Shown here: in pieces, positions 1,716 to 46,410 of the stretch
How positions within the stretch are numbered: position 1 is the first letter of the stretch
Layout: each line of letters begins with the position of its first letter
Virus record (IMG/VR): IMGVR_UViG_3300030385_002649
Location: 1 to 64,000 of that record
Length of the DNA: 64,000 bases
Direction: 5' to 3' (one strand)
Notes under the pieces: generated by a model
What the model was told of the DNA's origin: nothing
The model's input: only the letters and a program-made list of their open reading frames with translations
Database searches by the model: none
Translations under genes and position numbers: made by a program

Positions 1716-1842
1716 AGACTAGACCCAAGATGATCATTCTTGGTGACTTCCGATATGTGTGATGCTGCGATCCTAGTGGTGTCTCATTATTTTGCAAGTG
1801 GGACTCACGGAAGCTACGGCGCTACAACTTACTGGAGATAAG

Positions 1843-5578: not shown

Positions 5579-5651
5579 GGGCTTGTAGCTCAGGGGTTAG
5601 AGCGCGACTCTTATAAGGTTGATGTCGATGGTTCGATTCCATCCTGGCCCA
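5579..5651 (+). tRNA. tRNA-Ile (anticodon TAT); CCA not encoded
   Basis: Cloverleaf: acceptor GGGCTTG/CTGGCCC, D-arm GCTC/GAGC, anticodon loop CT-TAT-AA, T-arm GATGG-TTCGATT-CCATC. Confidence 0.85.
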
Positions 5652-5654
5652 CTT

Positions 5655-5737
5655 GATCGAATGGCGGAATTTGGCAGACGCGCATGTTTCAAACACATGT
5701 TCCATTAGGAGTGAGGGTTCGAGTCCCTCTTCGATCA
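5655..5737 (+). tRNA. tRNA-Leu (anticodon CAA); CCA not encoded
   Basis: Acceptor GATCGAA/TTCGATC, anticodon arm CATGT-TTCAAAC-ACATG, long variable arm, GAGGG-TTCGAGT-CCCTC. Confidence 0.92.
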
Positions 5738-5752
5738 TGAAAATAATTTTCG

Positions 5753-5834
5753 GGACCTGTGGTGGAATTGGCATACACACAACACTTAAAATGTTGCGCC
5801 GCAAGGCTTGCGGGTTCGAGTCCCGCCAGGTTCA
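5753..5834 (+). tRNA. tRNA-Leu (anticodon TAA); CCA not encoded
   Basis: Acceptor GGACCTG/CAGGTTC, anticodon arm CAACA-CTTAAAA-TGTTG, long variable arm, GCGGG-TTCGAGT-CCCGC. Confidence 0.92.
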
Positions 5835-10501: not shown

Positions 10502-10510
10502 GGATAACCA

Positions 10511-11962: not shown

Positions 11963-11971
11963 GAGAATACT

Positions 11972-12718
11972 ATGAAAATCGACCACGCAATCATTATCGG
12001 AGCCGGTGGTACTGGCTCACACCTCATCGAACCCCTCGTCCGACTGCTGCATTATCATGAGGATGGCACCAAGTCAATCACTGTTATCGATGGTGACCAG
12101 TACGAGGACTCCAACTCGACCCGCCAACTGTTCAGCAAAGAACTGATGGGGGTCAACAAGGCCGAGGCCCAGGGTCGCAAGATTGACTTCGCTGAGCTTC
12201 GGATCGTCCCAGAGTACGTCAACGACCTCAAGATGCGACGCGTCATGAACGAGATCGGAGCCGCTGAAGACGACATGATCCTTCTGATCCTTGCGGTGGA
12301 CAACCATGCCACCCGCAGCGCGGTCATGAAGATGTTGACGAGCGATGAATACCAGAACTTCGCTGTCCTATCACCGGGCAACGATTTCAGCCACGGCCAA
12401 GTGGTGTGTTGGGCTCGCATCAATGGGGAGGACAAGACTCAGCACCCGTTCGAGAGATACCCGCTCCTTGAATTCCCCGAGGACAACATTCCTGGGTTGG
12501 GTTGCGCGGAGGAAGCTGTTAGCACTCCTCAGTTGATCATGGCCAACGCTCTGGCAGCGGTCTCGACCAATCTCTACGTGTCTAACATCTTGGATAACAA
12601 GCCGATCCCTGATGAGATCCACTTCAACGTGTATAGCCTCAAGATTGTCCCGTCCGAGGGCACTGAGGTCATTCTCGCCTTAGAAACTGGCGAAACCTCC
12701 GAAGTCCTAGCTGGATGA
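11972..12718 (+). CDS. ThiF/E1-family Ubl-activating enzyme
   Basis: IIGAGGTG, DGDQYEDSNSTRQ, NKAEA, AVDNHATR, putative catalytic Cys in GLGCAEE, QLIMAN. Confidence 0.9.
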   Translation: MKIDHAIIIGAGGTGSHLIEPLVRLLHYHEDGTKSITVIDGDQYEDSNSTRQLFSKELMGVNKAEAQGRKIDFAELRIVPEYVNDLKMRRVMNEIGAAEDDMILLILAVDNHATRSAVMKMLTSDEYQNFAVLSPGNDFSHGQVVCWARINGEDKTQHPFERYPLLEFPEDNIPGLGCAEEAVSTPQLIMANALAAVSTNLYVSNILDNKPIPDEIHFNVYSLKIVPSEGTEVILALETGETSEVLAG

Positions 12719-12918
12719 CTGAGGCTCAGTTTGCCTGCCAGGTGGCTGAAATCCTGGCGGGCATGGGGAGGGACGATCTGGACGACAACGGAGTCGTCCT
12801 TCCTTTTCGGGGCCTTTCTCGTCCTGCTGTCCAAATTGTGGACAATTTAGTTACGGTTGTCGTTCAAGATAACGGCGGACAACCACAAACCTTTCAACTC
12901 CACGCTAAAAAGCTCTAG
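12715..12918 (+). CDS. Hypothetical protein coupled to E1
   Basis: ATGA overlap with the E1 stop. Confidence 0.6.
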   Translation: MTEAQFACQVAEILAGMGRDDLDDNGVVLPFRGLSRPAVQIVDNLVTVVVQDNGGQPQTFQLHAKKL

Positions 12919-12926
12919 GAGGATTT

Positions 12927-14426
12927 ATGACGACTGTTACTCAAAAGACCAAGAAAGCGCTAATTCCGGGCCTCAAAACGGAAGAAACCCCGCCACCCTT
13001 GCCTGCTCCACTCCCTGCTTTGCCTGGCTCGGTTGGCGCTAATTCTTCCACGTTCGGCAGGCATAAGGTTAACTATGAGCAGTTGCTGCTCATGGATACG
13101 CCGAAGTTCGTCGCAACTGGGAAAAACAATTACATCCAAAAAAACGCAATAGTTCACGTGACTGGTATCTCCGGTTGTGGGATGTACAAAACGTTCTTCT
13201 TCAAGGGCAAGCCCAAATGGGCTTATGCGAACGGCCTAACGCCGGTCTTTGAGGGCAAGCCTGAAGAGACCTATGAGAAGGAGCTTGGTGAGCACGAGGT
13301 CGGTCATCAAAAACTCGACCTCTATGCTGGATTTACTAATGGTGTCCCTAACGCAGTCGTTGGTTCCATAGCTAAGGGAACTCGAATCAACGTAGTCGAC
13401 GAAACCTCGTGTGGTTTATGGAAGGCGCTCTATAGGGAAGGTCAGAAGCTGTGGGTCTACTCCGCAGGGTTGATCCTAGTGATCAACGCAACCGCTGATG
13501 GTTGCCAGACCAGCAAAATCCGCACCTTCGAAGTAGACGGGGTTAAGTACGTAGTCAAGGATGGTGCACCTTACAAGAAGGTCGACAAGAGTGGTCAGCC
13601 TGGCGACTATTTCCTTCAACGGATGACGGTTGAGGACACTATGGAAGTTCTGCGCAAGCGTAAGGTGGCTATGGCCTTGTCAGGCGAGAAACCGATGATC
13701 GAAATCCCAAAGGTCATCGAGGAAGTGAAGGGCGCTCGGACGCCTAAACCTCTAACCACATTGGAGAAAGCTTTCATCCAGGAATGGAAGGGTAAGATAA
13801 ACCGAATCGTCGGAAAGCTCAGCGATGAAGCTTTCGTGACGGTTTTGTTGACCTTGGTGCCGAAGGGTAGCAGGCTCAACAAAGTGAAGGTGATGCACGG
13901 TCTCCTGGGCGATAGGTCTCCTTCTATGCGAGCGTGTCACAAGGCTATCAGTGGGGCGGTGGATATCCCTAACATCACTCTCCCTGAGAAGGTAGCTGGT
14001 CCTCTCTTCGGCCCTCTAGCTAAGGCGACAGCTACCAAGAAGCTGGAGCTTAAGGTTAGCGAACTCGAGCTTAAACTTGCTCAGGCGGAGCATAGGCTTG
14101 CTCAGGCGGAGCAGACCAACTATGGTGGCGTCCGTGAGGGTACGGTCACTGAACTGGAGACCACTAAAGGCAAGCTGACAGCGGCGTACATTGATATCGT
14201 AGACGTTCTGGCTGTCCAAGCTCAGGTCATCGAATTCGTCCAGGATAGCCTGGATGGGCTATTGAGTATCGGGGCTCTTGGTACTGGTGACGATGCGAAC
14301 GAACTCCGCAAGTCGTTTGCTTTCCTTCGTCGGACGCTGTCTAATGAGCAGAGTCGGGCTGAAGATTTGGAGGCTCATTCCAAGAAGTACTTGGAGGAGC
14401 ACCTTGGTTGCGATGAAGACTGGTAG
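12927..14426 (+). CDS. Protein with two SH3b-like repeats and a C-terminal coiled coil
   Basis: Internal repeats IQKNAIVHVTGISGCGMYKTFFFKGKPKWAYANGL / IAKGTRINVVDETSCGLWKALYREGQKLWVYSAGL; AGGAGG RBS. Confidence 0.6.
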   Translation: MTTVTQKTKKALIPGLKTEETPPPLPAPLPALPGSVGANSSTFGRHKVNYEQLLLMDTPKFVATGKNNYIQKNAIVHVTGISGCGMYKTFFFKGKPKWAYANGLTPVFEGKPEETYEKELGEHEVGHQKLDLYAGFTNGVPNAVVGSIAKGTRINVVDETSCGLWKALYREGQKLWVYSAGLILVINATADGCQTSKIRTFEVDGVKYVVKDGAPYKKVDKSGQPGDYFLQRMTVEDTMEVLRKRKVAMALSGEKPMIEIPKVIEEVKGARTPKPLTTLEKAFIQEWKGKINRIVGKLSDEAFVTVLLTLVPKGSRLNKVKVMHGLLGDRSPSMRACHKAISGAVDIPNITLPEKVAGPLFGPLAKATATKKLELKVSELELKLAQAEHRLAQAEQTNYGGVREGTVTELETTKGKLTAAYIDIVDVLAVQAQVIEFVQDSLDGLLSIGALGTGDDANELRKSFAFLRRTLSNEQSRAEDLEAHSKKYLEEHLGCDEDW

Positions 14427-25883: not shown

Positions 25884-27071
25884 ATGGAATCAATTATTCA
25901 ATTCTTGCGTGACGCTAAGAATAGAGGACAGGACCCTCTACAAGCTCTACGTGATAGGAAAACCAACATCCAGATCTACCGAAATCCAGCCTACGATGAT
26001 CTCGTTGGCCTGAAATGCCTCGGAAAGGAACTCGGAAAGATTGATCGTGAGTGCAATGGGATTGTTATCGATGTGAGACGCATAATCCCAATTGCTGTGC
26101 CTTTCAATGTCTGGCGCAATGACAATGACAACGGCGATGCGCTATTCAATTGGTGTAACTTTAGCTATACTGACAAGGAAGATGGCTTTCTGGCTATCTT
26201 GTATTACTACGATGATCACTGGCAGGTTAACACCGATGACTCGTTCGGGTATGGCAAGGTGCCTAACTTTTCGGGAAACTGGAGAGACCTGTTCTGGAAG
26301 CACGCGCCTGAAAGTCTGATCGATGGGCTGCGGACGTATGATCGGAACGCGCACACCACTTTCTTGTTTGAGGTGTGCGCTCCTGAGATACGGACGGTCC
26401 GTAAGCATGCTGAGCCTAAGATCACGCTGGTGGGGATCAATAACTTCGATAGTCGTAGAATGCTGACTGACTATGGCGTCTATGATGTGATGAGTATGGC
26501 AAACAGGTTCGGCGTCAATGCCATCAAGTTCACCGAGTTCTACGCTCGTGGAGTCTCCAGAGCGAGAATAAATGCCATGGCAGAGATTAACGCTTATCTA
26601 GCGTCTAAGACCGAAAACGATCCGACCTTTGAAGGTGTCGTCCTTAGGGATGATCACAATCGGAGGCTTGTCATACAGACTGAGACTTTCAAAACTCTCA
26701 GGCGGTTGAAGGGCATCAAGTCCATGAAACCTGAGAACATCGTCCCGCTCTGTATGAAGGGCGAAAACGAACAGTTCTTTAGTGCTTTGCCAGATTGTGT
26801 TAGCGCTTTCAAGACGGTTAGCGGAAAGCTGACAGAGGCTTTTAAGGACCTGAGCGAGACTTGGATGTCACACAGGGAGCTTGAGACCAACAAGGACTTC
26901 GCCGAGCAAGTTAAGGAACACCCATTCGGTTGGCTCCTTTTTAAAATGCGTAAGATCAATCCTGGGGGCAGCCCTGAGGATCTTAGGCAACTTTGGCGCG
27001 ATAAGTGCCATCACCAAAAGATTTCCGAGAAGCTTTTCGGGGATCAAGTTCTAGAGTACACGGAGATTTAA
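25884..27071 (+). CDS. T4 Rnl1-like RNA ligase homolog, apparently degenerate
   Basis: KEDG (motif I), FLFEVCAP, EGVVL (motif IV) retained; motif V reads RLVIQ instead of KxK. Confidence 0.65.
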   Translation: MESIIQFLRDAKNRGQDPLQALRDRKTNIQIYRNPAYDDLVGLKCLGKELGKIDRECNGIVIDVRRIIPIAVPFNVWRNDNDNGDALFNWCNFSYTDKEDGFLAILYYYDDHWQVNTDDSFGYGKVPNFSGNWRDLFWKHAPESLIDGLRTYDRNAHTTFLFEVCAPEIRTVRKHAEPKITLVGINNFDSRRMLTDYGVYDVMSMANRFGVNAIKFTEFYARGVSRARINAMAEINAYLASKTENDPTFEGVVLRDDHNRRLVIQTETFKTLRRLKGIKSMKPENIVPLCMKGENEQFFSALPDCVSAFKTVSGKLTEAFKDLSETWMSHRELETNKDFAEQVKEHPFGWLLFKMRKINPGGSPEDLRQLWRDKCHHQKISEKLFGDQVLEYTEI

Positions 27072-29015: not shown

Positions 29016-30098
29016 ATGGCTACTAAAGCACCACTATTGCCAGACATTATGGCATCCGACCTAACCAAAGTCGCAATTTTTCTAGGGGCTCAACCAGATC
29101 CTGACGGGCTGGCTTCCCAGCACATGATGGCCGAACTCATCAGGATCAAGAACCCATCAGTGATAATTGGAAAATTCCATCGAGGAGACTTCAGTCATCC
29201 CCAGAACTCCACCATGGTGCAACTGTTAGGAATGGACTCTATTCCCTACAGCGAGTTCAATAAGGATGACGGTTGGTCTACTATCATTTCATGCGATGGA
29301 CCGCCGAGCGTGTGCCCAAGCTATCGGACTGAAAGCGGCGGGACTAAGACTGTAATTCCTGATTTCGTAATTGACCACCATGAGCAGAAGGGGCCCAAGC
29401 CAAGTGGTGGGGCCGACGTTCGCCCAATCGGGTCTTGCTCATCGATAATGTGGGAATACGCCATGGAGTCTGGTTACGACTTCGGCACAGAAGAGGGAGT
29501 AAAGCTGGCGACAGCACTCGGCGTCGGAATCAACACTGACACCCGGTTTGGAGGGGAAGAATCCTGTTCTCCCCTTGACTATGAGGCCCTAGCTTATTGC
29601 CAGATTAACAAGGATGATAAGCTTTACCGCGACATTCTTAATTATCCTAAGCCTGAGTACTTCATGGACTTGATGGTGGATGGGTGGAAGCATAAAGTTC
29701 CTGAAGGTAACGTTCTTGTTACAGGAATTGGGACTCTTAACCCGGCTCGTGTCTGGGTCGTACCGGCTCTGGCCGAAGAGTATCTTAAAATGTCCGGGGT
29801 CGATACGACCGTGGTTTTCGCCATCATTGAAGGGCCGGAAGGCAACTATATCAAGATTAGCGTCCGCTCGAACCGATCATCCCTTAACGTGGACACCTTC
29901 ACTAGACAAGCTTTTGGCTCTGGAGGCGGCAAGCGTGGCGCTGGAGCAGCGACTGTTAGTGTTCCCCCTCTGCTTCAGTGTTCTGAGGCAAGCCAAAGAG
30001 ATAAGTTCTATGAGGCTGTCCGAGAAATGATCATCCACAAGACGCTTCAAACTGCCAATGACGGGGCTAGGTCTAAGAAGGAAGAAGCAGCAGAATGA
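29016..30098 (+). CDS. DHH/DHHA1-family phosphoesterase (NrnA-like)
   Basis: QPDPDGLAS, IISCDG, VIDHH, GINTDT, ISVRS, GSGGGKRGAGAA. Confidence 0.85.
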   Translation: MATKAPLLPDIMASDLTKVAIFLGAQPDPDGLASQHMMAELIRIKNPSVIIGKFHRGDFSHPQNSTMVQLLGMDSIPYSEFNKDDGWSTIISCDGPPSVCPSYRTESGGTKTVIPDFVIDHHEQKGPKPSGGADVRPIGSCSSIMWEYAMESGYDFGTEEGVKLATALGVGINTDTRFGGEESCSPLDYEALAYCQINKDDKLYRDILNYPKPEYFMDLMVDGWKHKVPEGNVLVTGIGTLNPARVWVVPALAEEYLKMSGVDTTVVFAIIEGPEGNYIKISVRSNRSSLNVDTFTRQAFGSGGGKRGAGAATVSVPPLLQCSEASQRDKFYEAVREMIIHKTLQTANDGARSKKEEAAE

Positions 30099-32217: not shown

Positions 32218-33885
32218 TTAATCTAAATTTAAGACCCATTTCTTTTTTCCATAATCCATTATTTTGTATAGACCCTGAGCGCGCCTCAATTGTTCTTCAG
32301 TTTTGTCAGAGGCGCGCTCAATTGTTGTTTTGCGAAATTTTGACTTGTGAAATCTAGATCTGTGGTCGGTATACCAGTAATCCGGCTTTACATCATGTAT
32401 AAAGTTAAACCCGCATTTGCTATAAACGGTTCCGTTTGACAATCTGTTATCACTAAAAGAGGAAACGCTCCCGGTTATTCCGAATGACGATAACCTTTTT
32501 ATGAGATAAGACCATAACCCATGCACTAAAAATGAAGGATGAGAGCACATTCTGACAATTTCATAATTCTCGTCCGATTGCCTACTAGGAGTATGGATGC
32601 TTAAAGCGCCAACTAATTGTCCTTCAAAATACACACCGAGATGAAGCTTAGCAGACCTGAACCCTAAGTAATGATAAGAATCGTAAAATTGCCTCACTTC
32701 GTTAGCTCGCACGATTCTTATCGAGCATTTCTGAGGTCTGATTTTGGTTCTTATCGCGGTGTGCGTTTTAGACAACAAGTAATTCTTGACAAGATCTTTC
32801 TTGTTGTCCCACTCGTCTGAGTACAAAACAATAACATCATAATTCTTGCTTAAAGACTCAAATTTGGCTTGATCAGTTCGATTTTTCCTAAAATAAGATG
32901 AATGATATCTTAAACCATTAAATTCAATAATTAATGAGTGCTCGCGTATTAATAGGTCGACAGAATAATTATCAACTTTAGCTTCTAATTCGGACTTTAC
33001 GCCATTTTGCTGCAAAAAATTTTTAATACTGACGACTGGAGCAGAAACTTTAAAACTTGCGCAGCCACACGATTTTATTTGTTTTAGAAAGATATCATAA
33101 AATCGTGGAGAAAAAACTTTATGGCATAACAAGCACTCAATTTTTGGTTTTTTCTTAGAAAATGTGATTGGTTTTAAAAAAGAACCATTTAGTGATTCTT
33201 GAAATTCAACGAAGTTTGACGGATAGGATCCTTTCTTAAAACCGCTATCTTTCCACCATTCAGCCGCTTTAATAGAGCAATTACCACAGCTTTTAATTTT
33301 TCCAGAGGTAAGATGCGATACTCTTGCTGTGTGATTGCTTCCGCACGCACATTTACATAATAATTTAATTTCAGAATTTACCGATATTGGTTTTTTAGGG
33401 ATCGCTTCAACAGTTAAACGTCCAAACGTGTTTCCAACCCACCATTTTGGGTCCTTTATGTTGGGGTTGATCGTTTTTGTTTTCTTTGTCTTTTTCCCTT
33501 TAAAATTTAGAGAATGCTCAGCGAACTTGGCAGATTTGCTTTTTAATAAGCACCCGCAGGATTTGGTTAAGCCGTTTATCACTGATTTCAAAACAATTGA
33601 CTTAACATTCCCGCATTTGCAGTTGAATTTAACTTTTTTGTTTTTCGAAATCGGGAATGTTAAGTCATCAATGATTGGGTTCAGTAAAATTAACGACAGG
33701 TTTTGCGATAGGTTTAATAGGTCTTCTTTTAACAAAAAAGAACATTTTCCACATGATTTGGATACGCCAGTAGCGAAGTTTTTCCAAGGGAATGTTTTTA
33801 CAGTTTTTAACCGACACTGGCATTGGAATTTTACTAGTTGTCGGCTGTGTTTTTTTAAAGGAGTATTGTTTAATGGGATCCACAT
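32218..33885 (-). CDS. Hef-like homing endonuclease: repeated Zn-ribbons, PD-(D/E)xK/Vsr-like nuclease and C-terminal GNAT/Mom-like domain
   Basis: Repeated CxCG...SCG units; VDLLIREHSLIIEFNGLRYHS; FYDSYHYLG...YEIVRMC...FSDNRLSNGTVYSKCGF...PDYWY; AT-rich and inverted relative to neighbours. Confidence 0.75.
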   Translation of the reverse strand: MWIPLNNTPLKKHSRQLVKFQCQCRLKTVKTFPWKNFATGVSKSCGKCSFLLKEDLLNLSQNLSLILLNPIIDDLTFPISKNKKVKFNCKCGNVKSIVLKSVINGLTKSCGCLLKSKSAKFAEHSLNFKGKKTKKTKTINPNIKDPKWWVGNTFGRLTVEAIPKKPISVNSEIKLLCKCACGSNHTARVSHLTSGKIKSCGNCSIKAAEWWKDSGFKKGSYPSNFVEFQESLNGSFLKPITFSKKKPKIECLLCHKVFSPRFYDIFLKQIKSCGCASFKVSAPVVSIKNFLQQNGVKSELEAKVDNYSVDLLIREHSLIIEFNGLRYHSSYFRKNRTDQAKFESLSKNYDVIVLYSDEWDNKKDLVKNYLLSKTHTAIRTKIRPQKCSIRIVRANEVRQFYDSYHYLGFRSAKLHLGVYFEGQLVGALSIHTPSRQSDENYEIVRMCSHPSFLVHGLWSYLIKRLSSFGITGSVSSFSDNRLSNGTVYSKCGFNFIHDVKPDYWYTDHRSRFHKSKFRKTTIERASDKTEEQLRRAQGLYKIMDYGKKKWVLNLD

Positions 33886-33936
33886 TATGTATCTTACCTT
33901 TGCTTATTTACCCCCAAATATATCAATGGAGAAATC

Positions 33937-35064
33937 ATGCAGCGAAGTAAAGTTAATTTTATAGTCGATGGACAATGGGGTAGTTGTGGAAAGGGCCTAA
34001 TTGCTGGCTACTTAGCTGAAAAACACAAGGTTAACGTCTGCTCTACTAACAACATGCCCAACGCTGGGCACACCATGGTCCTAGAAGATGGAACCAAGTT
34101 CATTTCTAAGATCCTCCCCGTCACCGCTTTCCTCAATACCGTTGGACAACGATCTAATATCCTTATCGGGCCAGGAGCGGGATTTTGTCTTGACCGCCTC
34201 TTCATGGAAATCGAACGATGCGGTTTAGACGAGGAAGACGTTTTGATCCATCCAAGGGCTATGGTGGTCACCCAAGAGCATGCTGCGGCTGAGCGAGGCG
34301 ACTCAAGTGGTGTATCAACCAAGCACATTGCTAGTACCATGCAAGGTTGTGGGACGGCTCGGGCTGAAAAGATTATGCGGGGCGCACACGTAGAACTAGC
34401 ACGTGATTTCGATGTTCTCAAGGGCCTCGTGACGAACAACGGAGATGAGTGGTTCACCCTGGTCCACAACATCCTCAAGGGCGATAAGACCATGTGGTTG
34501 CACGAGGGCTCACAAGGGTTCAGCTTAGGTATGAATCACGGCAGCCATTATCCACAATGCACCTCACGAGAATGTACGACCGCTCGCGAAATCGCTGACA
34601 TGGGAATTTCCCACCAGAAAGTCGGTGACGTCTACCTAGTCATCCGCCCCTTCCCAATTCGAGTCGGCAACGTCATCGAGGACGGCAAGGAGGTTGGATA
34701 CTCAGGAGACTGCTACGACGACCAAGAGGAAATCTCCTGGGCTGACCTGAAGGCACAATCCGGCTACCCCGCCGATTTCGATCTGAAGGAATTGACCACG
34801 GTGACCAAGCGTCTTCGTCGTTGCTTCACCTACTCGGATTTCCAGGTCAGGATGGCGGCGGAAATCAACGGTGCTACTAAGATTGCATTGAACTTCGCTA
34901 ATTATCTTGATTACTCAATCTTCCAAACTAGTGGAAACAACATTAAAGACCTTCCTGATAAGGTTCGGGATTTTATCGCCATGATCGAGGACCAAACTGG
35001 CCTCCCTGTGACGCTGGTGGGTACCGGACCTGGCAACAACCACGTCTGGGATTTAGAAGAATAG
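33937..35064 (+). CDS. purZ: Adenylosuccinate-synthetase homolog with PurZ signature (N6-succino-2-amino-dAMP synthase)
   Basis: GQWGSCGKG (Ser where PurA has Asp), PNAGHT, EGSQGFSL, YPQCTSR, RPFPIRV, ELTTVTKRLRR, ALNFANY (NF rather than TKLD). Confidence 0.75.
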   Translation: MQRSKVNFIVDGQWGSCGKGLIAGYLAEKHKVNVCSTNNMPNAGHTMVLEDGTKFISKILPVTAFLNTVGQRSNILIGPGAGFCLDRLFMEIERCGLDEEDVLIHPRAMVVTQEHAAAERGDSSGVSTKHIASTMQGCGTARAEKIMRGAHVELARDFDVLKGLVTNNGDEWFTLVHNILKGDKTMWLHEGSQGFSLGMNHGSHYPQCTSRECTTAREIADMGISHQKVGDVYLVIRPFPIRVGNVIEDGKEVGYSGDCYDDQEEISWADLKAQSGYPADFDLKELTTVTKRLRRCFTYSDFQVRMAAEINGATKIALNFANYLDYSIFQTSGNNIKDLPDKVRDFIAMIEDQTGLPVTLVGTGPGNNHVWDLEE

Positions 35065-35073
35065 GCCGAAGCA

Positions 35074-35532
35074 ATGACTAATACCTATAAGTATGACGAG
35101 AAAGAGGCGATCAACCCTGTCATTCTTTCTTTCGGAATGCGAGATTTGAGGGGCAAGGAACGTGAAGCTCTCCGAGAACTTAAGGGGGTCGACTTTAGGA
35201 CTCAGTGCGTGTTTAGTATCACCATAGAGTGCGATACTAAACACATTAAGACTAAACTGCTCATGTCGGAAGAGAGCCCTGAGTGGACTTACCAACATGC
35301 AAGAGAATTATGTGCTTATGACCAGACTGAAAAGTTTCACGTCCCTTATATCGACATTGCTAATGTTGAAGACCTGTGGTGGAAAGAGCCAAAGGAATGG
35401 GAACACGCTACACTTGTGGATGGCGAGTTAATCAAGACTGAGAGCGACAAGGTTTACTTGTTTGCTGTCAACCTGCCCGACAGATTGTGTCGAGTGGATT
35501 TTATGTTGAGTACAGAGGTACAAGATGGCTGA
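35074..35532 (+). CDS. Hypothetical protein downstream of purZ
   Basis: ORF track, packing. Confidence 0.7.
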   Translation: MTNTYKYDEKEAINPVILSFGMRDLRGKEREALRELKGVDFRTQCVFSITIECDTKHIKTKLLMSEESPEWTYQHARELCAYDQTEKFHVPYIDIANVEDLWWKEPKEWEHATLVDGELIKTESDKVYLFAVNLPDRLCRVDFMLSTEVQDG

Positions 35533-35815
35533 AGAAGAGAAATCGTGTCTAATTGAAGCGCACGACATTGTTAGAAGTCGAAACAAGAACTATGGCGATC
35601 CTGTGACCACAGCTGGTCAGGTTGCCAGAGCTTTTAACGCGCTTAAGGGTGAGGAACTTCTCACTCCTGCGGACATCCCTTTGGTGCAAATGCTGTATAA
35701 GATCATTCGGTCTGAACACGGTTATAAACGAGATAACAACGTTGATCTGTCCGGGTATACTGACATCCGCGAGAGAATCTTCCTAAGCGAACAGGAGTTG
35801 AAAAGTGCGAACTAA
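35525..35815 (+). CDS. DUF6378-like small helical protein (possible nucleotide pyrophosphohydrolase fold)
   Basis: RNKNYGDP...YKIIR...RDNNVDLSGY. Confidence 0.65.
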   Translation: MAEEEKSCLIEAHDIVRSRNKNYGDPVTTAGQVARAFNALKGEELLTPADIPLVQMLYKIIRSEHGYKRDNNVDLSGYTDIRERIFLSEQELKSAN

Positions 35816-36263
35816 GAATAAGAGTGACAGTTGTATTAGCTTCGGCCATGTGACGGATCTGGTTGAGCAAATGCACACTAATCTTGAGCCTAAGATCATG
35901 GCTGAAGTTAGTGAGCTAGAAAGGGACGTCGAGTACGCGCGCATGGATTTACGCTCGACTAAGAAGGACAACCCTGGGATTTATGACGCCCTCATCTCCC
36001 TGGTGTGCGAAATGCAACGCATTATTCCTAGGATTAACAGCGTGGATAACCTCACTTTCATCAAGGGCTTGGAGATGTTGCTTGGTAATTGGCCTAATCC
36101 TTGTCGTCAAATCAATGAGGTGCGTAAGTTGGTGCACCGAACGATGCTCTTGAACAGGATGGTCAGGGTGAAGCAAGGCATGACTCAGATTCTTATCGGT
36201 GGGTGTGAGCTTGTCCGTGAGGAAACTCGAAAGTTCGATAAGAAATTGATCATGGCTGATTGA
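35805..36263 (+). CDS. Hypothetical protein
   Basis: ORF track. Confidence 0.6.
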   Translation: MRTKNKSDSCISFGHVTDLVEQMHTNLEPKIMAEVSELERDVEYARMDLRSTKKDNPGIYDALISLVCEMQRIIPRINSVDNLTFIKGLEMLLGNWPNPCRQINEVRKLVHRTMLLNRMVRVKQGMTQILIGGCELVREETRKFDKKLIMAD

Positions 36264-36351
36264 TGAGTGAATATATATATTGACCGAATTGAAAATGACC
36301 TAACCCATAACGGTCGGTTTACAGCATCTGCATTTTACCAAGGAGAAGACA

Positions 36352-36750
36352 ATGAGCCAGGAGACTGGTGGAAACCCGGGCGAGGTAAATGATCTGAGCC
36401 AAGTGGTGGCCGACATCCGAAAGGGCGTCAATAAACTGAATATGATCACCTCTGGCTTAAACGCTTATTCTGGTAAGTGTGGAACATTCAAAGAAGCCGA
36501 GGGCGGATTTCTCGTAATCTACGAAGTCGATTCAGAGACAATAGAAATCAACGTTATCGAAGTTGAAGTGACCGGTGAAGAAAACCACTGGGTAGTTCGG
36601 TGGGGCAGGCACTTACTTGCGGTTTGTCAGAACTATCACGAGTTAGTTGGGGCTCTAGTCGGAGATTATGCTTTAAAACTTGTGAAAGTGGCTAAGAAAT
36701 TCGACGAGAAAGGCTGGCCTAGAATAGCCTTAAGAGAGGAGACAAAGTGA
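36352..36750 (+). CDS. Hypothetical protein
   Basis: AAGGAG RBS. Confidence 0.7.
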   Translation: MSQETGGNPGEVNDLSQVVADIRKGVNKLNMITSGLNAYSGKCGTFKEAEGGFLVIYEVDSETIEINVIEVEVTGEENHWVVRWGRHLLAVCQNYHELVGALVGDYALKLVKVAKKFDEKGWPRIALREETK

Positions 36751-38972
36751 AACTCGATATTGGACACCATGACGTTGTAACGTCAACGGACTTCGAAACA
36801 ACGAAGTTCTCCGCAGGGAACCTAGCAGTTCTATTTAAAATCCTGCGAAAGAAAATGTACTCGGACCCAATCTACACCATCTGTCAAGAGGTGATGAGCA
36901 ACGCCCGAGACGCGCATATCGAGGCTGGCAAAGCACACGTGCCAATCCTCGTAAAACTCCCCGATGATTTCGAATCATCAATACGAATCCAAGACTTCGG
37001 GCCGGGCATCAGTCCCAGCCGAATGGCAGGAGTCGTCTGCAAATACGGAGAATCGACAAAAAGAGAGGCCAACGACGAATCGGGAGGCTTCGGGCTAGGG
37101 TTCAAAACACCCTTCGCTTACGTTCCAACCTTCACCATTATCGCTACCACTCCCGAACCAGGCGGCGAAGGAGTAGAGTACATCACTCGACAATACCAAG
37201 CTTACATTGACAAGACTGGTGTCGGAGCGATTAGCCTCTTAAGAGAATACGAGGGAACCGCTGAAGAACAAGGCACGTCCATCATCATTCCGGTCATGGA
37301 AAAAGACTATAGCCGATTCTCGGATTGCGTCCTTAATGCGGCTTTTTTCTGGAACGTACGTCCTAAGGTCGTCGACCTCAGACTCGCGGCGAACGCTAAA
37401 GTCTCATTTTCCACGGCTGACAAGTACAAAAAACCACAAGACTGGCGATGGATTAAGATAGATTGGAAATTCGAGGGATACGGAGACCGCTGGAAAGTTT
37501 TAAACACTCAGAACATTTCATACGGTGGTGGGCGAACTCGTGCTTCTGGGGTGATTATTGATGGTATTCAATATCCTCTGCACCTTAGTAAAATCTACGA
37601 AGATGGAACAGTTCCAGGCTATATTCGGCGAATTGTCGAGAAATCCTGCTTAAAACTGTTCTTTTCCGTTGGTGATCTAGAGGTAACATCTAACCGTGAG
37701 GACCTAGACTACAACGATGACGTTCGCCGGAAGCTCAAGTATTTGCTTTACCGTGCTAAGGCAGAACTGTTAGGTTCGGCTAGAGAACGACTTTCTAGCG
37801 CTAACAACATCTACGAAGCAACGTCTCTCTTCAGAAAACTCAAAGATGACCCTGCTTATCCAATGGTAAGCAATGTGTGGGACGGGGCAGCGTTACAAGA
37901 GAAAATCAGCTTTGGTAGTTCAGCCGAAATCTATAAGTATGAGTATTATGGTGGTGGGTCGGTTACCCGTACTGGAAAGTACACTTCTTACTCCTCACAA
38001 TACAATTATAATCTAAACATTCCAATCCGTTCGGATGTGATGATAATTGAAGACGACTTGTGGCAAAACCGCCCGTCGATCCCCAGGATCGAGACAATTT
38101 TCGAGCTTAACCCAAAACTTGATTCTGTCTACGTTGTCAAGTTTCCTAAACCTGAAACACCAGGCGACAAAGTTGAGGCTCACAACAACTGGGAGAAGGC
38201 AAGAGTTAAGTGGGATCGTTTTAAGGTTCCATTACTGTCATCATTCCCCAAGAAGAGAAAATCGGTAACTAGAGCTAAGTCGAGAATTAGCAAGGTAAAA
38301 CTCGCTAGGGGAAGCGGATGGGATCACACTGATATCAGCCCTGAGTCAGGTTCTGGTCTTTGTGTCATCCTGAAGGGTAAGGATATTTACTCTGACTGGG
38401 AGAAGAAAAAACTTGTTAGTCGAAGAAACTCTATAGCAATAGCGGATTTCTTCAACATGGACTTGTATGGGGTTTTTTCCCGTTGGGTTCCTAAAATGGG
38501 GAGTGGCTGGAAGAACGTAAGGGATTTCGCTTTCAAGAAGCTGGAGAAAATGCGCAAGGATCCTGAGATCATAATTGGTCTTAAGCAGGATCCGGCATGG
38601 AACCCTAATGAAGGTCTTCCGACATACTTGTACAATTTTCTCGTTAAGTGGAGAGATGATCTGGATCCGATGGGGGTTGCTCGGTCTTATCTTGATGCTG
38701 CGGTTGATGACAAAACTGACGGCAAGATTGAAGAACTTAATAACTTGGAAGGGTTGCTTGGTCAACCTCAATCTACGAGGGAGAAAAATGCGACTCTTCA
38801 GAACTTGCATGACAAGTTTTGGAAAGCCTACACGATGATTGAGAAGCATCATCGTGCTTTTGGCGTTAAAGAAGAAGAAATCAAGTTTTATATCATGGCT
38901 AAGGACGCGCATATGGCGCAAGAAGCCAACATTATACCTGTCAACATTGTTGACGCAGAAGGAGACGACTGA
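36747..38972 (+). CDS. rIIA: RIIA-like protein (GHKL/Hsp90-type ATPase N-terminus)
   Basis: KMYSDPIYTICQEVMSNARDAH, IQDFGPGIS, YGESTK, GGFGLGFKTPFAY; directly upstream of rIIB. Confidence 0.85.
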   Translation: MKLDIGHHDVVTSTDFETTKFSAGNLAVLFKILRKKMYSDPIYTICQEVMSNARDAHIEAGKAHVPILVKLPDDFESSIRIQDFGPGISPSRMAGVVCKYGESTKREANDESGGFGLGFKTPFAYVPTFTIIATTPEPGGEGVEYITRQYQAYIDKTGVGAISLLREYEGTAEEQGTSIIIPVMEKDYSRFSDCVLNAAFFWNVRPKVVDLRLAANAKVSFSTADKYKKPQDWRWIKIDWKFEGYGDRWKVLNTQNISYGGGRTRASGVIIDGIQYPLHLSKIYEDGTVPGYIRRIVEKSCLKLFFSVGDLEVTSNREDLDYNDDVRRKLKYLLYRAKAELLGSARERLSSANNIYEATSLFRKLKDDPAYPMVSNVWDGAALQEKISFGSSAEIYKYEYYGGGSVTRTGKYTSYSSQYNYNLNIPIRSDVMIIEDDLWQNRPSIPRIETIFELNPKLDSVYVVKFPKPETPGDKVEAHNNWEKARVKWDRFKVPLLSSFPKKRKSVTRAKSRISKVKLARGSGWDHTDISPESGSGLCVILKGKDIYSDWEKKKLVSRRNSIAIADFFNMDLYGVFSRWVPKMGSGWKNVRDFAFKKLEKMRKDPEIIIGLKQDPAWNPNEGLPTYLYNFLVKWRDDLDPMGVARSYLDAAVDDKTDGKIEELNNLEGLLGQPQSTREKNATLQNLHDKFWKAYTMIEKHHRAFGVKEEEIKFYIMAKDAHMAQEANIIPVNIVDAEGDD

Positions 38973-40054
38973 TGAAGTACGTCAATCATATTATGGGAGC
39001 TGGTCACGTCACTATGATCTTCTCAGATCGTGACCCGATTAACATTCTAAGTGACAACCCTCAATATCACGCCATCGTCGGATGTCTAAGACAGCAGCAG
39101 TTCGACAAGGCTGCAACGCTTGCCGATAGGGCTTCGATGGTCGCGGAGACGACGAAGGGTAAGTTCGTCGTTAGGAATGGTGTCATTGTTATCGACGGTG
39201 AGTTGATTCCTCGCGTCTTGTCCAATCGGTTGCTTCAATTTGTGGAGCATCACTTGGATACGTCCGCTCTGGAGAACTTCTGGGACAACCTTAAGGAGAA
39301 CCCGAGCGAGGAATCGAAGAAGGACCTTTTCCTTTTCTTGGAGAAGAATCACATTCCCTTGACCGAAGATGGGTGCTTCATTGGTTATAAGAAGGTGAAT
39401 GACGATTTCACTGACTGTCATACCGGCTCGATTGACAACACGCCCGGTATTGTTGTTAGGATGCCTAGGGATAAGGTGAGCGCCGATCGAACTGTGCACT
39501 GTGGCCCTGGTCTTCACGTCGCTGACTTCTCCTACGCCGATAAGGCAATGGGTACTGGAGTAATGTTGAAGGTCAAGGTCCACCCTAAGGACGTGGTGTC
39601 GGTGCCTAATGACCACAATGCGAAGAAGATGCGAGTTTGTCGTTATCAGTCTCTTGAGGTGTATGGTGACGACGTTGAGATTCCTGAGCAACTTGTGGTT
39701 GAACCTACTGAGGCTAAGGAAGTTAAGCGTCGAGTTGTTGGCAAGAGGGCTAAGTCTGCTGTCCTTAAGGCTGACAAGGAAGGTCGGATCAGAATTCCTG
39801 GTAAGATTATGCGTCAGATCGGTGCTGGTGTTGGGCACAAGGTTAAGGCGTTTGTCAATAACGTTCGTAGTCGTAACGTCATGGTTGTCTTTCATAAGAC
39901 CAACGCGACTTTCCACGCTTCTAACGAGTACAGAGTGGGTGACGATAACAGCATCCGTCTTTCGCCATCTTTCTTGCGCAACGCTAAGATCGACGGGTAT
40001 GATGAATACAAGGTGCGCCTTAAGGATGACGCTCTAGAAATCCGGGTTAACTAA
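38972..40054 (+). CDS. rIIB: RIIB-like protein with C-terminal AbrB-like extension
   Basis: IPLTEDGCFIGYKKV, CGPGLHV, VKVHPKDVVSVP..KMRVCRY. Confidence 0.85.
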   Translation: MKYVNHIMGAGHVTMIFSDRDPINILSDNPQYHAIVGCLRQQQFDKAATLADRASMVAETTKGKFVVRNGVIVIDGELIPRVLSNRLLQFVEHHLDTSALENFWDNLKENPSEESKKDLFLFLEKNHIPLTEDGCFIGYKKVNDDFTDCHTGSIDNTPGIVVRMPRDKVSADRTVHCGPGLHVADFSYADKAMGTGVMLKVKVHPKDVVSVPNDHNAKKMRVCRYQSLEVYGDDVEIPEQLVVEPTEAKEVKRRVVGKRAKSAVLKADKEGRIRIPGKIMRQIGAGVGHKVKAFVNNVRSRNVMVVFHKTNATFHASNEYRVGDDNSIRLSPSFLRNAKIDGYDEYKVRLKDDALEIRVN

Positions 40055-45906: not shown

Positions 45907-46410
45907 ATGACGATTTACTGTGATATGGACGGAGTTGTGGCCTCGTGGGAGAAAGCGAGGGACAATCTCGTCGGTCCAGGTGCTAGCAAATCCCAAACGT
46001 GGAAGGCCATTAGCAAAGCCGGACACAGCTTCTGGGCTAGCATCCCAGAATTTAAGTGGTCTCGGAAGTTTTACGACGATTTGAAGAGGACCGATGACAC
46101 TTGTTTTTTAACCAGCCCTAGTTTGGACCCTAGCTCGTGCTCTGGTAAGTTGGAATGGTTGCAAAGGTTCACTGAAGACAGGAACTTCCGTAATTACATT
46201 ATCACTAACCAAAAGTATCGCCTGGCGTACGGACCCGGAGCCATCCTAATCGATGACAAAGAGAAGCACGTCGATGCTTTCAATAAGAAGGGTGGGATCG
46301 GAATCCTATTTCCACGGCCTTACAACCGAGCAAGGGATCGCGCCGATGATCCGGTGAGCGCAGTGATGGAAACACTGTCTCTAATTTATCCGGGGCGCAT
46401 CCAAGTCTAG
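45907..46410 (+). CDS. 5'(3')-deoxyribonucleotidase (NT5C-like HAD)
   Basis: IYCDMDGVV, FLTSP, GKLEWL, ILIDD. Confidence 0.8.
   Translation: MTIYCDMDGVVASWEKARDNLVGPGASKSQTWKAISKAGHSFWASIPEFKWSRKFYDDLKRTDDTCFLTSPSLDPSSCSGKLEWLQRFTEDRNFRNYIITNQKYRLAYGPGAILIDDKEKHVDAFNKKGGIGILFPRPYNRARDRADDPVSAVMETLSLIYPGRIQV

What the first reader, a model, noticed from the sequence alone, without database searches (positions are those of the whole stretch)
33937..35064. PurZ-type synthetase: possible 2-aminoadenine (Z) genome in a large phage
Seen: GQWGSCGKG, RPFPIRV, TTVTKRLRR and ALNFANY. Established: PurA has GDEGKG and a GTP-specifying TKLD-type motif. PurZ of Z-genome phages such as S-2L and PhiVC8 has GSTGKG, YPIRV and an LNF motif and uses dGMP + ATP. 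The Z phages I know of are mostly modest-sized, whereas this window has jumbo-like content. Inference: this phage makes dZTP and may replace adenine fully or partly, evading restriction and CRISPR.
Basis: partly seen in the sequence, partly recalled or inferred. Interest (0 to 1): 0.82.

Follow-up and report, generated by a model that had tools for sequence, protein, structure and literature searches.

The report
PurZ-type synthetase in a 371-kb phage
A 371-kb marine phage carries an intact gene for the enzyme that small phages use to make 2-aminoadenine (Z) for their DNA, but it belongs to a separate large-phage branch that lacks the usual helper genes, so Z in this genome is plausible and unproven.

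Summary
It is a PurZ-type adenylosuccinate-synthetase homologue. It has Ser in place of the catalytic Asp13 (GQWGSCGKG) and the ATP-type LNFANY motif instead of the GTP-type (T/S)KxD. The dGMP-pocket residues of S-2L and phiVC8 PurZ are conserved except Tyr203 (Gln here). In trees it falls inside ATP-type PurZ, apart from PurZ0 and Asp-type PurA.

The window is the first 64 kb of a 370,804-bp Tara Oceans viral contig, so the "large phage" reading holds.

New here: the protein belongs to a 100/100-supported clade found on 150-408-kb phage contigs. That clade is sister to the classical Z-cluster PurZ clade. None of about 34 such loci has DatZ, MazZ/DUF550, DUF5664 or DpoZ within 10 kb. Every classical small-phage locus tested the same way has them. 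None was found in the first 112 kb of this genome either.

Sister-clade relatives with the same Ser also sit among housekeeping genes of bacterial chromosomes. The protein scores below NCBIfam's PurZ cutoff (235.5 vs 300 bits).

Verdict: PurZ-type enzyme well supported; Z-genome inferred only; full replacement doubtful without a dATP-clearing enzyme.

The parts
33937..35064 (+). purZ-like gene, 375 aa (succino-amino-deoxyadenylate synthase type)
   Evidence: ORF. Pfam PF00709 2.6e-34. PHROG 1211 9e-64. PDB phiVC8 PurZ 3.4e-47 and S-2L PurZ 3.1e-42. AlphaFold2 model pLDDT 96.7, best Foldseek hit 6FKO.
33928..33932 (+). Shine-Dalgarno GGAGA, ending 4 nt before the ATG
   Evidence: Read directly from the sequence printed.
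33970..33996 (+). P-loop GQWGSCGKG; Ser16 stands where PurA has the catalytic Asp13
   Evidence: All 256 relatives with a recognisable P-loop, plus the variants listed, carry Ser.
34060..34074 (+). NAGHT motif with the catalytic His45; an intein insertion site (NAGH|T) in several relatives
   Evidence: Invariant in A3/A4/A5. Intein junctions.
34549..34569 (+). YPQCTSR, nucleotide-monophosphate pocket (S-2L Y203-C204-T205 equivalent; Tyr is Gln here); second intein site (YPQ|CTSR) in relatives
   Evidence: Alignment. Residue list from PMC8342488. Intein junctions.
34645..34665 (+). RPFPIRV; Arg242-Val243 correspond to S-2L R240-V241, and V241 is the residue said to clash with a ribose 2'-OH. 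A 12-residue loop (GNVIEDGKEVGY) follows.
   Evidence: Alignment; PMC8342488.
34795..34821 (+). TTVTKRLRR; Thr and Arg residues of the dGMP/aspartate site (phiVC8 T262, S-2L T273/R280 equivalents)
   Evidence: and section 8 of the bioRxiv preprint.
34885..34905 (+). ALNFANY, adenine-binding motif of ATP-type PurZ (phiVC8 F295/N297/Y298; S-2L N305/F306/Q308). It replaces LTKLD of E. coli PurA and LSMAD/LTMLD of PurZ0.
35020..35031 (+). GTGP, C-terminal loop equivalent to S-2L G335-P336, which stacks on and hydrogen-bonds the adenine
32218..33885 (-). HNH-type homing endonuclease gene (555 aa) directly upstream and divergent; GC 35.9% against 47.6% for the window
   Evidence: PHROG 559 2.1e-55 and PHROG 3339 1.6e-51. 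Pfam Mom 2.3e-07. GC. The same gene stands upstream of an intein-bearing purZ in L075.
35074..36750 (+). Four small co-directional, tightly packed or overlapping ORFs after purZ: 152 aa, a 96-aa DUF6378 protein (35525-35815), 152 aa, 132 aa. They are context only; no functional link is shown.
   Evidence: DUF6378 9.3e-12. Atlas searches were uninformative. These ORFs are not shared with other purZ loci. hhalign of DUF6378 against DUF5664 was negative.
36747..40054 (+). rIIA and rIIB homologues, markers of a large T4-like phage (context)
   Evidence: PHROG 612 1.4e-60. PHROG 609 9.2e-58.

Best explanation
The gene encodes an active, ATP-using PurZ-type synthetase. Inferred reaction: dGMP + L-aspartate + (d)ATP gives N6-succino-2-amino-2'-deoxyadenylate (dSMP) + (d)ADP + Pi. 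As in known Z phages, host adenylosuccinate lyase and nucleotide kinases would convert dSMP to dZTP. The phage's own replicase would then put 2-aminoadenine opposite thymine. The enzyme belongs to a separate clade carried by 150-408-kb phages that have no DatZ, MazZ or DpoZ genes beside purZ. The degree of replacement is therefore open: partial substitution, or full substitution with an unrecognised way of removing dATP. What is shown: homology, the active-site signature, the phylogenetic position, the genome size, and the absence of the classical partner genes near purZ. What is inferred: the substrates, the downstream host steps, and any Z in virion DNA.
For: The ORF is intact and has an SD sequence. 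The best family and structure matches are PurZ: PHROG 1211 9e-64; PDB phiVC8 PurZ 3.4e-47, then S-2L PurZ 3.1e-42, P. horikoshii PurA 1.2e-36, PurZ0 1.7e-20, E. coli PurA 4e-14; NCBIfam best hit NF038379 PurZ 235.5 bits against archaeal-type PurA 201.6 and bacterial purA 136.7. The specificity residues are conserved in alignment A3, read against the residue lists in PMC8342488 and bioRxiv 10.1101/2025.10.22.683976: Ser16 for Asp13, Thr288, Arg242-Val243, Arg295, Asn319-Phe320-Asn322-Tyr323, Gly364-Pro365. Every one of the 270 nearest database relatives that retains a P-loop has Ser. In the careful tree the Asp-type short PurA lies outside. All Ser-type proteins group at 96/97. The LNF-type PurZ clade has 96/92 support. 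The window sits in a 31-row clade (100/100) that is sister (93/88) to the clade holding S-2L, phiVC8-like and Acinetobacter PurZ. The AlphaFold2 model has pLDDT 96.7 and its best Foldseek hit is phiVC8 PurZ 6FKO. Inteins inserted at NAGH|T and YPQ|CTSR in relatives, and a homing endonuclease next to the gene, fit a conserved and used gene. Partial Z incorporation without the full cluster is documented: an incomplete Z-cluster in E. coli still gave lower but measurable substitution, and S-2L PurZ itself consumes dATP (PMC8342488).
Against: No DatZ, MazZ, DUF550, DUF5664, DmtZ or DpoZ homologue was found in the window by phmmer --max (all E>0.2) or with a DatZ HMM. Pfam and PHROG scans of 83 window ORFs found no HD, MazG, NDT or PolA family. 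None was found in contig positions 62.6-111.7 kb; there, one dUTPase-family gene matches Wayne's Dut domain at 1.8e-19. None lies within 10 kb of purZ in about 34 large-phage loci; three of them (L070, L073, L079) instead have a Dut-like gene right after purZ. The same test found partners at all 27 classical small-contig loci. The NCBIfam PurZ score of 235.5 bits is below the curated cutoff of 300. Foldseek cannot separate PurZ (TM 0.80) from P. horikoshii PurA (TM 0.82). No archaeal PurA could be included in the trees. Relatives from the sister clade, with the same Ser and in at least two cases (L017, L030) the same LNF motif, sit between housekeeping genes in 0.6-1.0-Mb bacterial contigs, so the signature alone does not prove a Z genome. 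Phe12 of phiVC8, said to help accommodate the 2-amino group, is Trp here, as in PurA. No RNA run was listed.
Confidence: 0.6

Rival explanations
1. The enzyme performs PurZ chemistry, but its role is not wholesale genome substitution. It might remodel the deoxynucleotide pool during infection by consuming dGMP and (d)ATP. It might give only trace or low Z incorporation. It might make a 2-aminoadenine nucleotide for another purpose, as the chromosomal homologues in bacteria presumably do.
For: purZ is an orphan in every large-phage locus examined and in 30% of this genome. purZ sits in unrelated neighbourhoods in different large phages. Sister-clade Ser-type homologues lie in housekeeping contexts of Bdellovibrionales, Micavibrio and UBA6503 contigs, next to MazG or Ham1 NTP pyrophosphatases. 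In the NEB metaGPA study, 3 of 17 adenylosuccinate-synthetase genes from contigs scored as unmodified did not group with E. coli PurA.
Against: Once dZTP is made, polymerases generally accept it; Klenow was used that way in PMC8342488. Some Z in the DNA is therefore the default expectation. The gene is strongly conserved across a large phage clade and is a target of inteins. 70% of the genome was not inspected and could hold a dATP-clearing enzyme.
Confidence: 0.22
2. It is an archaeal-type short PurA acting as an auxiliary metabolic gene. It would convert IMP (or dIMP) to adenylosuccinate and so raise adenine nucleotide supply. No Z would be involved.
For: Full-length similarity to the archaeal-type PurA model NF003295 (201.6 bits, residues 6-374). 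Foldseek TM 0.82 to P. horikoshii PurA 5K7X. Trp12 as in PurA. The large-phage clade keeps a PurA-like C-terminal region. Large marine phages often carry nucleotide-metabolism genes; this genome has thymidylate kinase, dUTPase and an NT5C-type nucleotidase.
Against: The catalytic Asp13 is Ser in this protein and in all close relatives. The GTP-specifying (T/S)KxD is replaced by LNFANY. All purA equivalog models fall far below their cutoffs. The only Asp-type short homologue available falls outside the Ser-type group at 96/97. Sequence identity is higher to PurZ (34-35%) than to P. horikoshii PurA (28-29%).
Confidence: 0.1
3. The gene is decaying or selfish cargo moved around with the neighbouring homing endonuclease and has no role for the phage.
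For: A low-GC HNH homing endonuclease gene abuts it. The pairing recurs in L075. purZ neighbourhoods differ between phages.
Against: The 375-aa frame is intact and all catalytic motifs are present. The model has pLDDT 96.7. There is 50-68% identity across many contigs, with invariant active-site columns. Homing elements typically target conserved functional genes.
Confidence: 0.03

Closest known systems
PurZ of vibriophage phiVC8 (PDB 6FM1/6FKO/6TNH) and cyanophage S-2L (PDB 7ODX)
   Same: Same fold (Foldseek E about 4e-30, TM 0.79-0.80). Ser replaces Asp13. Shared motifs: TTVTK, PIRV, LNFxN/QY and G-P. Same ATP-type PurZ clade at 96/92.
   Different: Only 34-41% identity. Trp instead of Phe before the P-loop. 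Longer loop after PIRV. Longer PurA-like C-terminal region. 235.5 bits on NF038379 against 350-397 for the known enzymes. Carried by a 371-kb phage and not adjacent to datZ, mazZ or dpoZ.
'purA' of Bacillus phage vB_BpsS-140 (MH884512.1)
   Same: Best GenBank phage hit (38.7% identity, 2e-67). Ser-type P-loop, LNFANY, and a similar C-terminal region. No Z-cluster genes are annotated around it. Also below the NF038379 cutoff (211.5 bits).
   Different: 55-kb siphovirus-size genome. It branches basal to both the classical and the large-phage clades. To my knowledge its DNA composition has not been reported.
[quoted passage not shown]
   Same: Ser at the Asp13 position; a phage-borne adenylosuccinate-synthetase homologue.
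   Different: PurZ0 keeps an Asp in the base-specifying motif (LSMAD/LTMLD) and a GSEAKG P-loop. It forms its own clade at 100/99 and comes with DutZ/DmtZ/DUF5664 (PMC12884076). E-value to 7VF6 is only 1.7e-20.
Archaeal-type short PurA (Pyrococcus horikoshii, PDB 5K7X/2D7U; NCBIfam NF003295)
   Same: Same short architecture and fold (TM 0.82). Full-length alignment to NF003295.
   Different: PurA has the catalytic Asp and a GTP-type motif. 28-29% identity. NF003295 score of 201.6 is far below its cutoff of 368.
Chromosomal Ser-type PurZ-like genes of Bdellovibrionales, Micavibrio and UBA6503 MAGs (L017, L025, L030)
   Same: QFGSTGKG P-loop in all three, and LNFANY in L017 and L030. No DatZ or DpoZ nearby.
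   Different: 34-40% identity. They form a different subclade, inside the sister group of the large-phage clade. They are embedded among housekeeping genes: ferrochelatase; HflX; cmk and rpsA. A MazG or Ham1 gene stands next to them.

Membership tests
PurZ (ATP-type succino-amino-deoxyadenylate synthase) | Adenylosuccinate-synthetase fold and homology | tested here: met
   PF00709 2.6e-34. PDB hits. Model pLDDT 96.7 with Foldseek hits to PurZ and PurA structures at E about 1e-30.
PurZ (ATP-type succino-amino-deoxyadenylate synthase) | Ser in place of the catalytic Asp13 of PurA (100% of phage PurZ, PMC12884076) | tested here: met
   GQWGSCGKG, Ser16. All close relatives that retain a P-loop also have Ser.
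PurZ (ATP-type succino-amino-deoxyadenylate synthase) | Adenine-binding motif LNFxN/QY plus a C-terminal G-P, in place of the GTP-type (T/S)KxD | tested here: met
   ALNFANY at residues 317-323 and GTGP at 362-365, compared with E. coli LTKLD and PurZ0 LSMAD.
PurZ (ATP-type succino-amino-deoxyadenylate synthase) | dGMP-pocket residues, including the Val that excludes a 2'-OH and the Thr of TTVTK | tested here: met
   Arg242-Val243, Thr288, Arg295, Cys208-Thr209 and Arg148 are aligned with S-2L R240-V241, T273, R280, C204-T205 and R146. Exceptions: Tyr203 is Gln, and phiVC8 Phe12 is Trp.
PurZ (ATP-type succino-amino-deoxyadenylate synthase) | Phylogenetic placement with characterised PurZ, apart from PurZ0 and PurA | tested here: met
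   inside the LNF-type clade (96/92), sister (93/88) to the classical clade. Caveat: no archaeal PurA was in the trees.
PurZ (ATP-type succino-amino-deoxyadenylate synthase) | Score above the curated cutoff of NCBIfam NF038379 (300 bits) | tested here: not met
   235.5 bits. The controls pass: phiVC8-like 397, S-2L 350, PurZ0 Archimedes 325.
PurZ (ATP-type succino-amino-deoxyadenylate synthase) | Catalysis of dGMP + Asp + ATP to dSMP | not testable with these tools
   Needs an enzyme assay.
Z-cluster / Z-genome system (purZ + datZ + mazZ or DUF550, often dpoZ) | dATP triphosphohydrolase DatZ (YfbR-like HD), normally next to purZ | tested here: not met
   No hit in the window or in contig positions 62.6-111.7 kb with phmmer or with an 18-sequence DatZ HMM. 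Controls: DatZ was found at 25 classical loci. The remaining ~259 kb of the genome was not inspected.
Z-cluster / Z-genome system (purZ + datZ + mazZ or DUF550, often dpoZ) | (d)GTP pyrophosphohydrolase MazZ, DUF550 or DUF5664 | tested here: not met
   No homologue in the window. A 133-aa MazG-like gene lies about 42 kb downstream but gives no BLAST match to S-2L MazZ. The DUF6378 neighbour is not detectably related to DUF5664 (hhalign probability 0.2%, thin alignment).
Z-cluster / Z-genome system (purZ + datZ + mazZ or DUF550, often dpoZ) | Z-selective DNA polymerase DpoZ (PolA) | tested here: not met
   No PolA in the window or in the walked region. It is not an obligatory feature: S-2L uses a PrimPol (PMC8342488).
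Z-cluster / Z-genome system (purZ + datZ + mazZ or DUF550, often dpoZ) | 2-aminoadenine in virion DNA | not testable with these tools
   Illumina assemblies read Z as A. Only the source sample's DNA runs hold the locus.
PurZ0 (GTP-using variant) | Retained Asp in the base-specifying motif; GSEAKG P-loop; clade with Actinobacteria-phage enzymes | tested here: not met
   LNFANY and GSCGKG. PurZ0 forms a separate 100/99 clade.
PurA (adenylosuccinate synthetase, IMP + GTP) | Catalytic Asp13 and the GTP-specifying (T/S)KxD | tested here: not met
   Ser16 and LNFANY. The purA equivalog models score 63-202 bits against cutoffs of 368-700.

The most novel reading that the evidence does not exclude
A whole clade of 150-408-kb T4-like aquatic phages replaces much or all of its adenine with 2-aminoadenine by a DatZ/MazZ/DpoZ-independent route. 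Possible means are PurZ's own (d)ATP consumption, dGMP taken directly from host-DNA breakdown, or an unrecognised dATP/dAMP-clearing enzyme. These would be the first Z genomes outside small sipho- and podoviruses, and by far the largest.
Probability: 0.3. Interest if true: 0.85.

Novelty: new variant of a known kind. Interest (0 to 1): 0.62.

Why it matters
Z-DNA is so far documented only in small sipho- and podoviruses, where purZ travels with datZ and mazZ. In the papers I could search, none links PurZ with jumbo or huge phages.

This finding shows a large, well-supported PurZ subfamily on 150-408-kb phage contigs from marine and other metagenomes, without the classical helper genes.

If these genomes contain Z, three things follow. 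The size and lifestyle range of non-canonical DNA widens greatly. The Z-cluster is shown to be dispensable. Many metagenomic "giant" phages would be resistant to adenine-dependent restriction and hard to sequence with signal-based methods.

If they do not contain Z, the Ser/LNF signature now used to predict over 2000 Z viruses (PMC13128860) over-predicts. PurZ-type enzymes would then have another role, a possibility also raised by the bacterial chromosomal homologues.

Either outcome is testable with one recombinant enzyme and one virome experiment.

Tried and rejected
1. Nucleotide search of 33000-37000 against GenBank phages: no match.

2. Conserved partner directly downstream of purZ: the downstream ORFs of four loci are not alignable, and the window's neighbours recur in no other purZ locus.

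3. DUF6378 protein (35525-35815) as a MazZ/DUF5664 analogue. There was no PDB sequence hit, no phmmer hit to DUF5664, and hhalign gave probability 0.2%. The only lead left is that DUF6378 and DUF5664 are each found fused to DUF4406.

4. The two 152-aa neighbours: Atlas feature and structure searches were uninformative.

5. MazG-like gene about 42 kb downstream compared with S-2L MazZ: no BLAST alignment.

7. Walking the contig: five steps reached only about 111.7 kb and ran into tail genes, so I stopped.

8. GTDB genome scan: it gave no archaeal PurA outgroup and no member of the large-phage clade.

9. Expression evidence: no RNA run was listed. DNA runs came only from the source sample and one further run of the same study that holds almost none of it.

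10. Fold comparison to separate PurZ from archaeal PurA: not discriminating.

11. PurA, PurZ0 and pseudogene readings were rejected on the residues and trees described above.
Full report
**1. The observation**

The ORF is exactly as described: ATG at 33937, stop ending at 35064, + strand, 375 aa. A GGAGA ribosome-binding site lies at 33928-33932. All four quoted motifs are present:
- GQWGSCGKG, residues 12-20
- RPFPIRV, residues 237-243
- TTVTKRLRR, residues 287-295
- ALNFANY, residues 317-323

The protein matches Pfam Adenylsucc_synt at 2.6e-34 and PHROG 1211 "2-aminooxy adenylosuccinate synthetase" at 9e-64.

Against solved structures the order of hits is:
- phiVC8 PurZ, 3.4e-47
- S-2L PurZ, 3.1e-42
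- Pyrococcus horikoshii PurA, 1.2e-36
- PurZ0 of phage Archimedes, 1.7e-20
- E. coli PurA, 4e-14

E. coli PurA has QWGDEGKG and LTKLD. The phiVC8-like PurZ has QFGSTGKG and LNFCNY. S-2L PurZ has YPIRV and LNFAQY.

**2. Where the window comes from**

The window is positions 1-64000 of IMGVR_UViG_3300030385_002649, a 370,804-bp viral contig. The same protein is recorded on contigs of up to 370,976 bp from a Tara Oceans marine metagenome, ERR599373/PRJEB4419.

The window is almost entirely + strand. It holds rIIA and rIIB and tRNA-Ile and two tRNA-Leu. It also holds an RNA ligase, an RlaP nucleotidyltransferase, an NT5C-type deoxynucleotidase, and many orphans.

Walking right from the window reached contig position ~111.7 kb. 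That stretch holds:
- NAD-dependent ligase, UvdE and a PARP-like gene
- a MazG-like gene
- isocitrate lyase and malate synthase
- sugar-nucleotide genes
- thymidylate kinase and a dUTPase
- then tail and baseplate genes

So the "large phage" reading is correct.

**3. What the protein is**

Residue lists for S-2L and phiVC8 PurZ come from PMC8342488 and the bioRxiv metaGPA study. Read against them, alignment A3 shows these specificity determinants conserved:

| Feature | In this protein | Equivalent in known PurZ |
|---|---|---|
| Ser for the catalytic Asp13 | Ser16 | S-2L S23, phiVC8 S14 |
| Thr of TTVTK | Thr288 | phiVC8 T262, S-2L T273 |
| Arg and the Val that excludes a ribose 2'-OH | Arg242-Val243 | S-2L R240-V241 |
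| Arg of the dGMP/aspartate site | Arg295 | S-2L R280 |
| Adenine-binding motif | N319-F320-N322-Y323 | phiVC8 F295/N297/Y298 |
| C-terminal loop | Gly364-Pro365 | S-2L G335-P336 |

The differences are Trp for phiVC8 Phe12, Gln for S-2L Tyr203, a longer loop after PIRV, and a longer PurA-like C-terminal region.

Among the 270 nearest database relatives, every one that retains a P-loop has Ser.

An AlphaFold2 model is very confident (pLDDT 96.7). Its best Foldseek match is phiVC8 PurZ 6FKO. However, P. horikoshii PurA is equally close in fold (TM 0.82 against 0.80), so structure does not discriminate.

NCBIfam's dedicated PurZ model is the best hit at 235.5 bits, below its curated cutoff of 300. 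The known enzymes score 325-397. The archaeal-type PurA model scores 201.6 against a cutoff of 368. The protein is therefore PurZ-like by every diagnostic residue, but it is a divergent subfamily.

**4. Phylogeny**

I built three trees. The last used IQ-TREE with ultrafast bootstrap and SH-aLRT on 71 rows, rooted on E. coli PurA. Its results:
- An Asp-type short PurA homologue from a Rhizobium plasmid falls outside.
- All Ser-type proteins group at 96/97.
- PurZ0 is a separate clade at 100/99.
- An LNF-type PurZ clade of 63 rows has 96/92 support.
- Inside it, Bacillus phage vB_BpsS-140 branches first.
- The remainder splits (93/88) into two groups. One is a 30-row clade (98/93) holding S-2L, phiVC8-like, Acinetobacter, Burkholderia and Stenotrophomonas PurZ. 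The other is a 31-row clade (100/100) holding the window protein.

One caveat: I could not obtain an archaeal PurA by reference, so none is in the trees.

**5. The large-phage clade**

The big protein database lists 120 relatives at 50-68% identity. Thirteen of these clusters lie on contigs of 150-397 kb. IMG/VR gives 53 loci. Those at 43% identity or more lie on contigs up to 408 kb. Those at 36-39% lie on contigs of at most 60 kb.

Examples show phage structural genes nearby. L002 has T4 gp13, gp15 and sheath genes. One relative is on a 369.6-kb contig of an NCBI assembly (GCA_902731625.1).

By contrast, all 202 GenBank phage records with a homologue are below 43% identity, and those listed are 38-67 kb. 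The searchable literature links PurZ only to sipho- and podoviruses. No paper joins PurZ with jumbo or huge phages.

**6. The missing Z-cluster**

I used DatZ, MazZ, DUF550-DUF5664, DUF5664, DmtZ-DutZ and DpoZ from S-2L, an Acinetobacter phage and phage Wayne as queries.

In the window's six-frame ORFs nothing was found; all hits had E>0.2. An HMM built from 18 DatZ sequences also found nothing in the window, in the walked region, or in any large-phage locus.

The same phmmer test on all fetched loci gives a clean split:
- All 27 classical small-contig loci have DatZ and/or MazZ/DUF550 and/or DpoZ beside purZ.
- None of the roughly 34 loci of the large-phage clade does.
- Three members of that clade (L070, L073, L079) have a Dut-like gene right after purZ.
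- One (L069) has a PolA.

purZ also sits in unrelated neighbourhoods in different large phages.

The window's downstream neighbours are orphans. The DUF6378 protein two genes downstream could not be linked to DUF5664, although both domains occur fused to DUF4406.

Elsewhere in the inspected 30% of the genome there is a MazG-like gene with no detectable similarity to MazZ. There is also a dUTPase with all five canonical motifs.

**7. A complication: cellular relatives**

The GTDB scan returned Ser-type homologues at 34-40% identity with a QFGSTGKG P-loop (LNFANY in L017 and L030). They lie on 0.6-1.0-Mb contigs of Bdellovibrionales, Micavibrio and UBA6503 MAGs. Their neighbours are housekeeping genes:
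- ferrochelatase and a NADAR-domain gene (L017)
- HflX, an inositol monophosphatase and a MazG gene 3 bp upstream (L025)
- cmk, then the PurZ-like gene, then Ham1, then rpsA (L030)

They form a subclade inside the sister group of the large-phage clade.

Plasmids of Agrobacterium rubi and Burkholderia thailandensis carry longer Ser-type versions.

So the Ser/LNF signature occurs in replicons that presumably have ordinary DNA. It cannot by itself prove a Z genome.

**8. Most likely mechanism**

The enzyme most likely condenses dGMP with aspartate, using ATP or dATP, to give dSMP. Host PurB and kinases would complete dZTP, as shown for phiVC8 and S-2L (PMC8342488). The phage replicase would then incorporate Z.

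No dATP-clearing enzyme was found. An incomplete Z-cluster gives lower substitution in E. coli. I therefore judge partial substitution, or full substitution with an unknown helper, to be the open question.

My estimates are about 0.75 that the enzyme has PurZ chemistry, about 0.5 that virion DNA carries appreciable Z, and about 0.3 that replacement is near complete.

**9. Verdict**

The finding is a new variant of a known kind: a distinct orphan PurZ subfamily typical of huge phages. The decisive work is an enzyme assay, a full-genome scan for pool-editing enzymes, and a direct test of DNA composition.

Noticed in passing
Relatives P0123/L075, P0125, P0127, P0133, P0137, P0140, P0141, L077, L096 (no intein in the window gene; equivalent sites at window 34060-34074 and 34549-34569): Many purZ genes of the large-phage clade are split by inteins of about 320-425 aa. 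The inteins sit at two active-site positions, NAGH|T and YPQ|CTSR. Two proteins (L077, P0133) carry two inteins.
   Followed up: partly
window 32218-33885 (-): A 555-aa HNH-type homing endonuclease with a weak Mom-family match and 35.9% GC (window 47.6%) abuts purZ. A near-identical arrangement precedes an intein-bearing purZ in L075.
   Followed up: partly
L017:5974-7020, L025:5998-7095, L030:5980-7020 (GTDB MAG contigs of 0.61, 1.0 and 0.99 Mb): Ser-type PurZ-like genes (QFGSTGKG; LNFANY in L017 and L030) sit among housekeeping genes of Bdellovibrionales, Micavibrio and UBA6503. In Micavibrio a tandem-MazG gene ends 3 bp before the PurZ-like gene. In UBA6503 the order is cmk, PurZ-like, Ham1/RdgB, rpsA. 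Their role in cells is unknown.
   Followed up: partly
L099:3449-5062, L100:3431-5146, L101:292-1299, L102:295-1335 (plasmids): Plasmids carry further short adenylosuccinate-synthetase homologues. Agrobacterium rubi and Burkholderia thailandensis have 537-571-aa Ser-type proteins with an N-terminal extension, next to transposase, integrase and nuclease genes. A Sinorhizobium medicae plasmid has a Ser-type one. Rhizobium leguminosarum has an Asp-type one in a folE - X - purB cluster.
   Followed up: partly
L070:11035-11880, L073:4101-4946, L079:11078-11785: In one small subclade of the large-phage PurZ clade (contigs of 17-60 kb), a dUTPase-like gene follows purZ directly. It matches Wayne DmtZ-DutZ at 1e-17 to 1e-20. 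This recalls the PurZ0-type DutZ arrangement, but with an LNF-type PurZ.
   Followed up: no
window 8987-14426: Two large ORFs give weak Pfam hits to Prok-E2_D (8987-10501, E=2.3e-4) and Prok-JAB (10511-11962, E=4.1e-4). A ThiF-family hit (7e-12) occurs in one of the 66 window ORFs scanned together. Together these may be a ubiquitin-like conjugation module in a phage.
   Followed up: no
L042:15573-16862 (contig ~68.2-69.5 kb) and L044:12919-15716 (contig ~84.2-87.0 kb): Just beyond the window the phage encodes a WGR-PARP_reg-PARP protein. It also encodes adjacent isocitrate lyase and malate synthase genes (glyoxylate shunt) and a KDO/sialic-acid-type sugar-nucleotide cluster.
   Followed up: no
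window 35525-35815; proteins P0336, P0339, P0344 and others: DUF6378 (the window protein) and DUF5664 (a dATP/dGTP pyrophosphohydrolase of Z phages) are each found fused to DUF4406. DUF5664 is also found fused to NT5C. A profile comparison of the two domains was negative, but the DUF6378 alignment had only three sequences.
   Followed up: partly
window 1792-2757, 5579-5834, 25884-27071, 29016-30098, 45907-46410: An RNA-repair and tRNA set is present: RlaP nucleotidyltransferase, tRNA-Ile(tat), tRNA-Leu(caa), tRNA-Leu(taa), a T4 Rnl1-like RNA ligase, and a HAD_SAK_2 hit in one scanned ORF. A DHH/DHHA1 phosphoesterase and an NT5C-type 5'(3')-deoxyribonucleotidase are also present; the latter could affect dNMP pools.
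   Followed up: no
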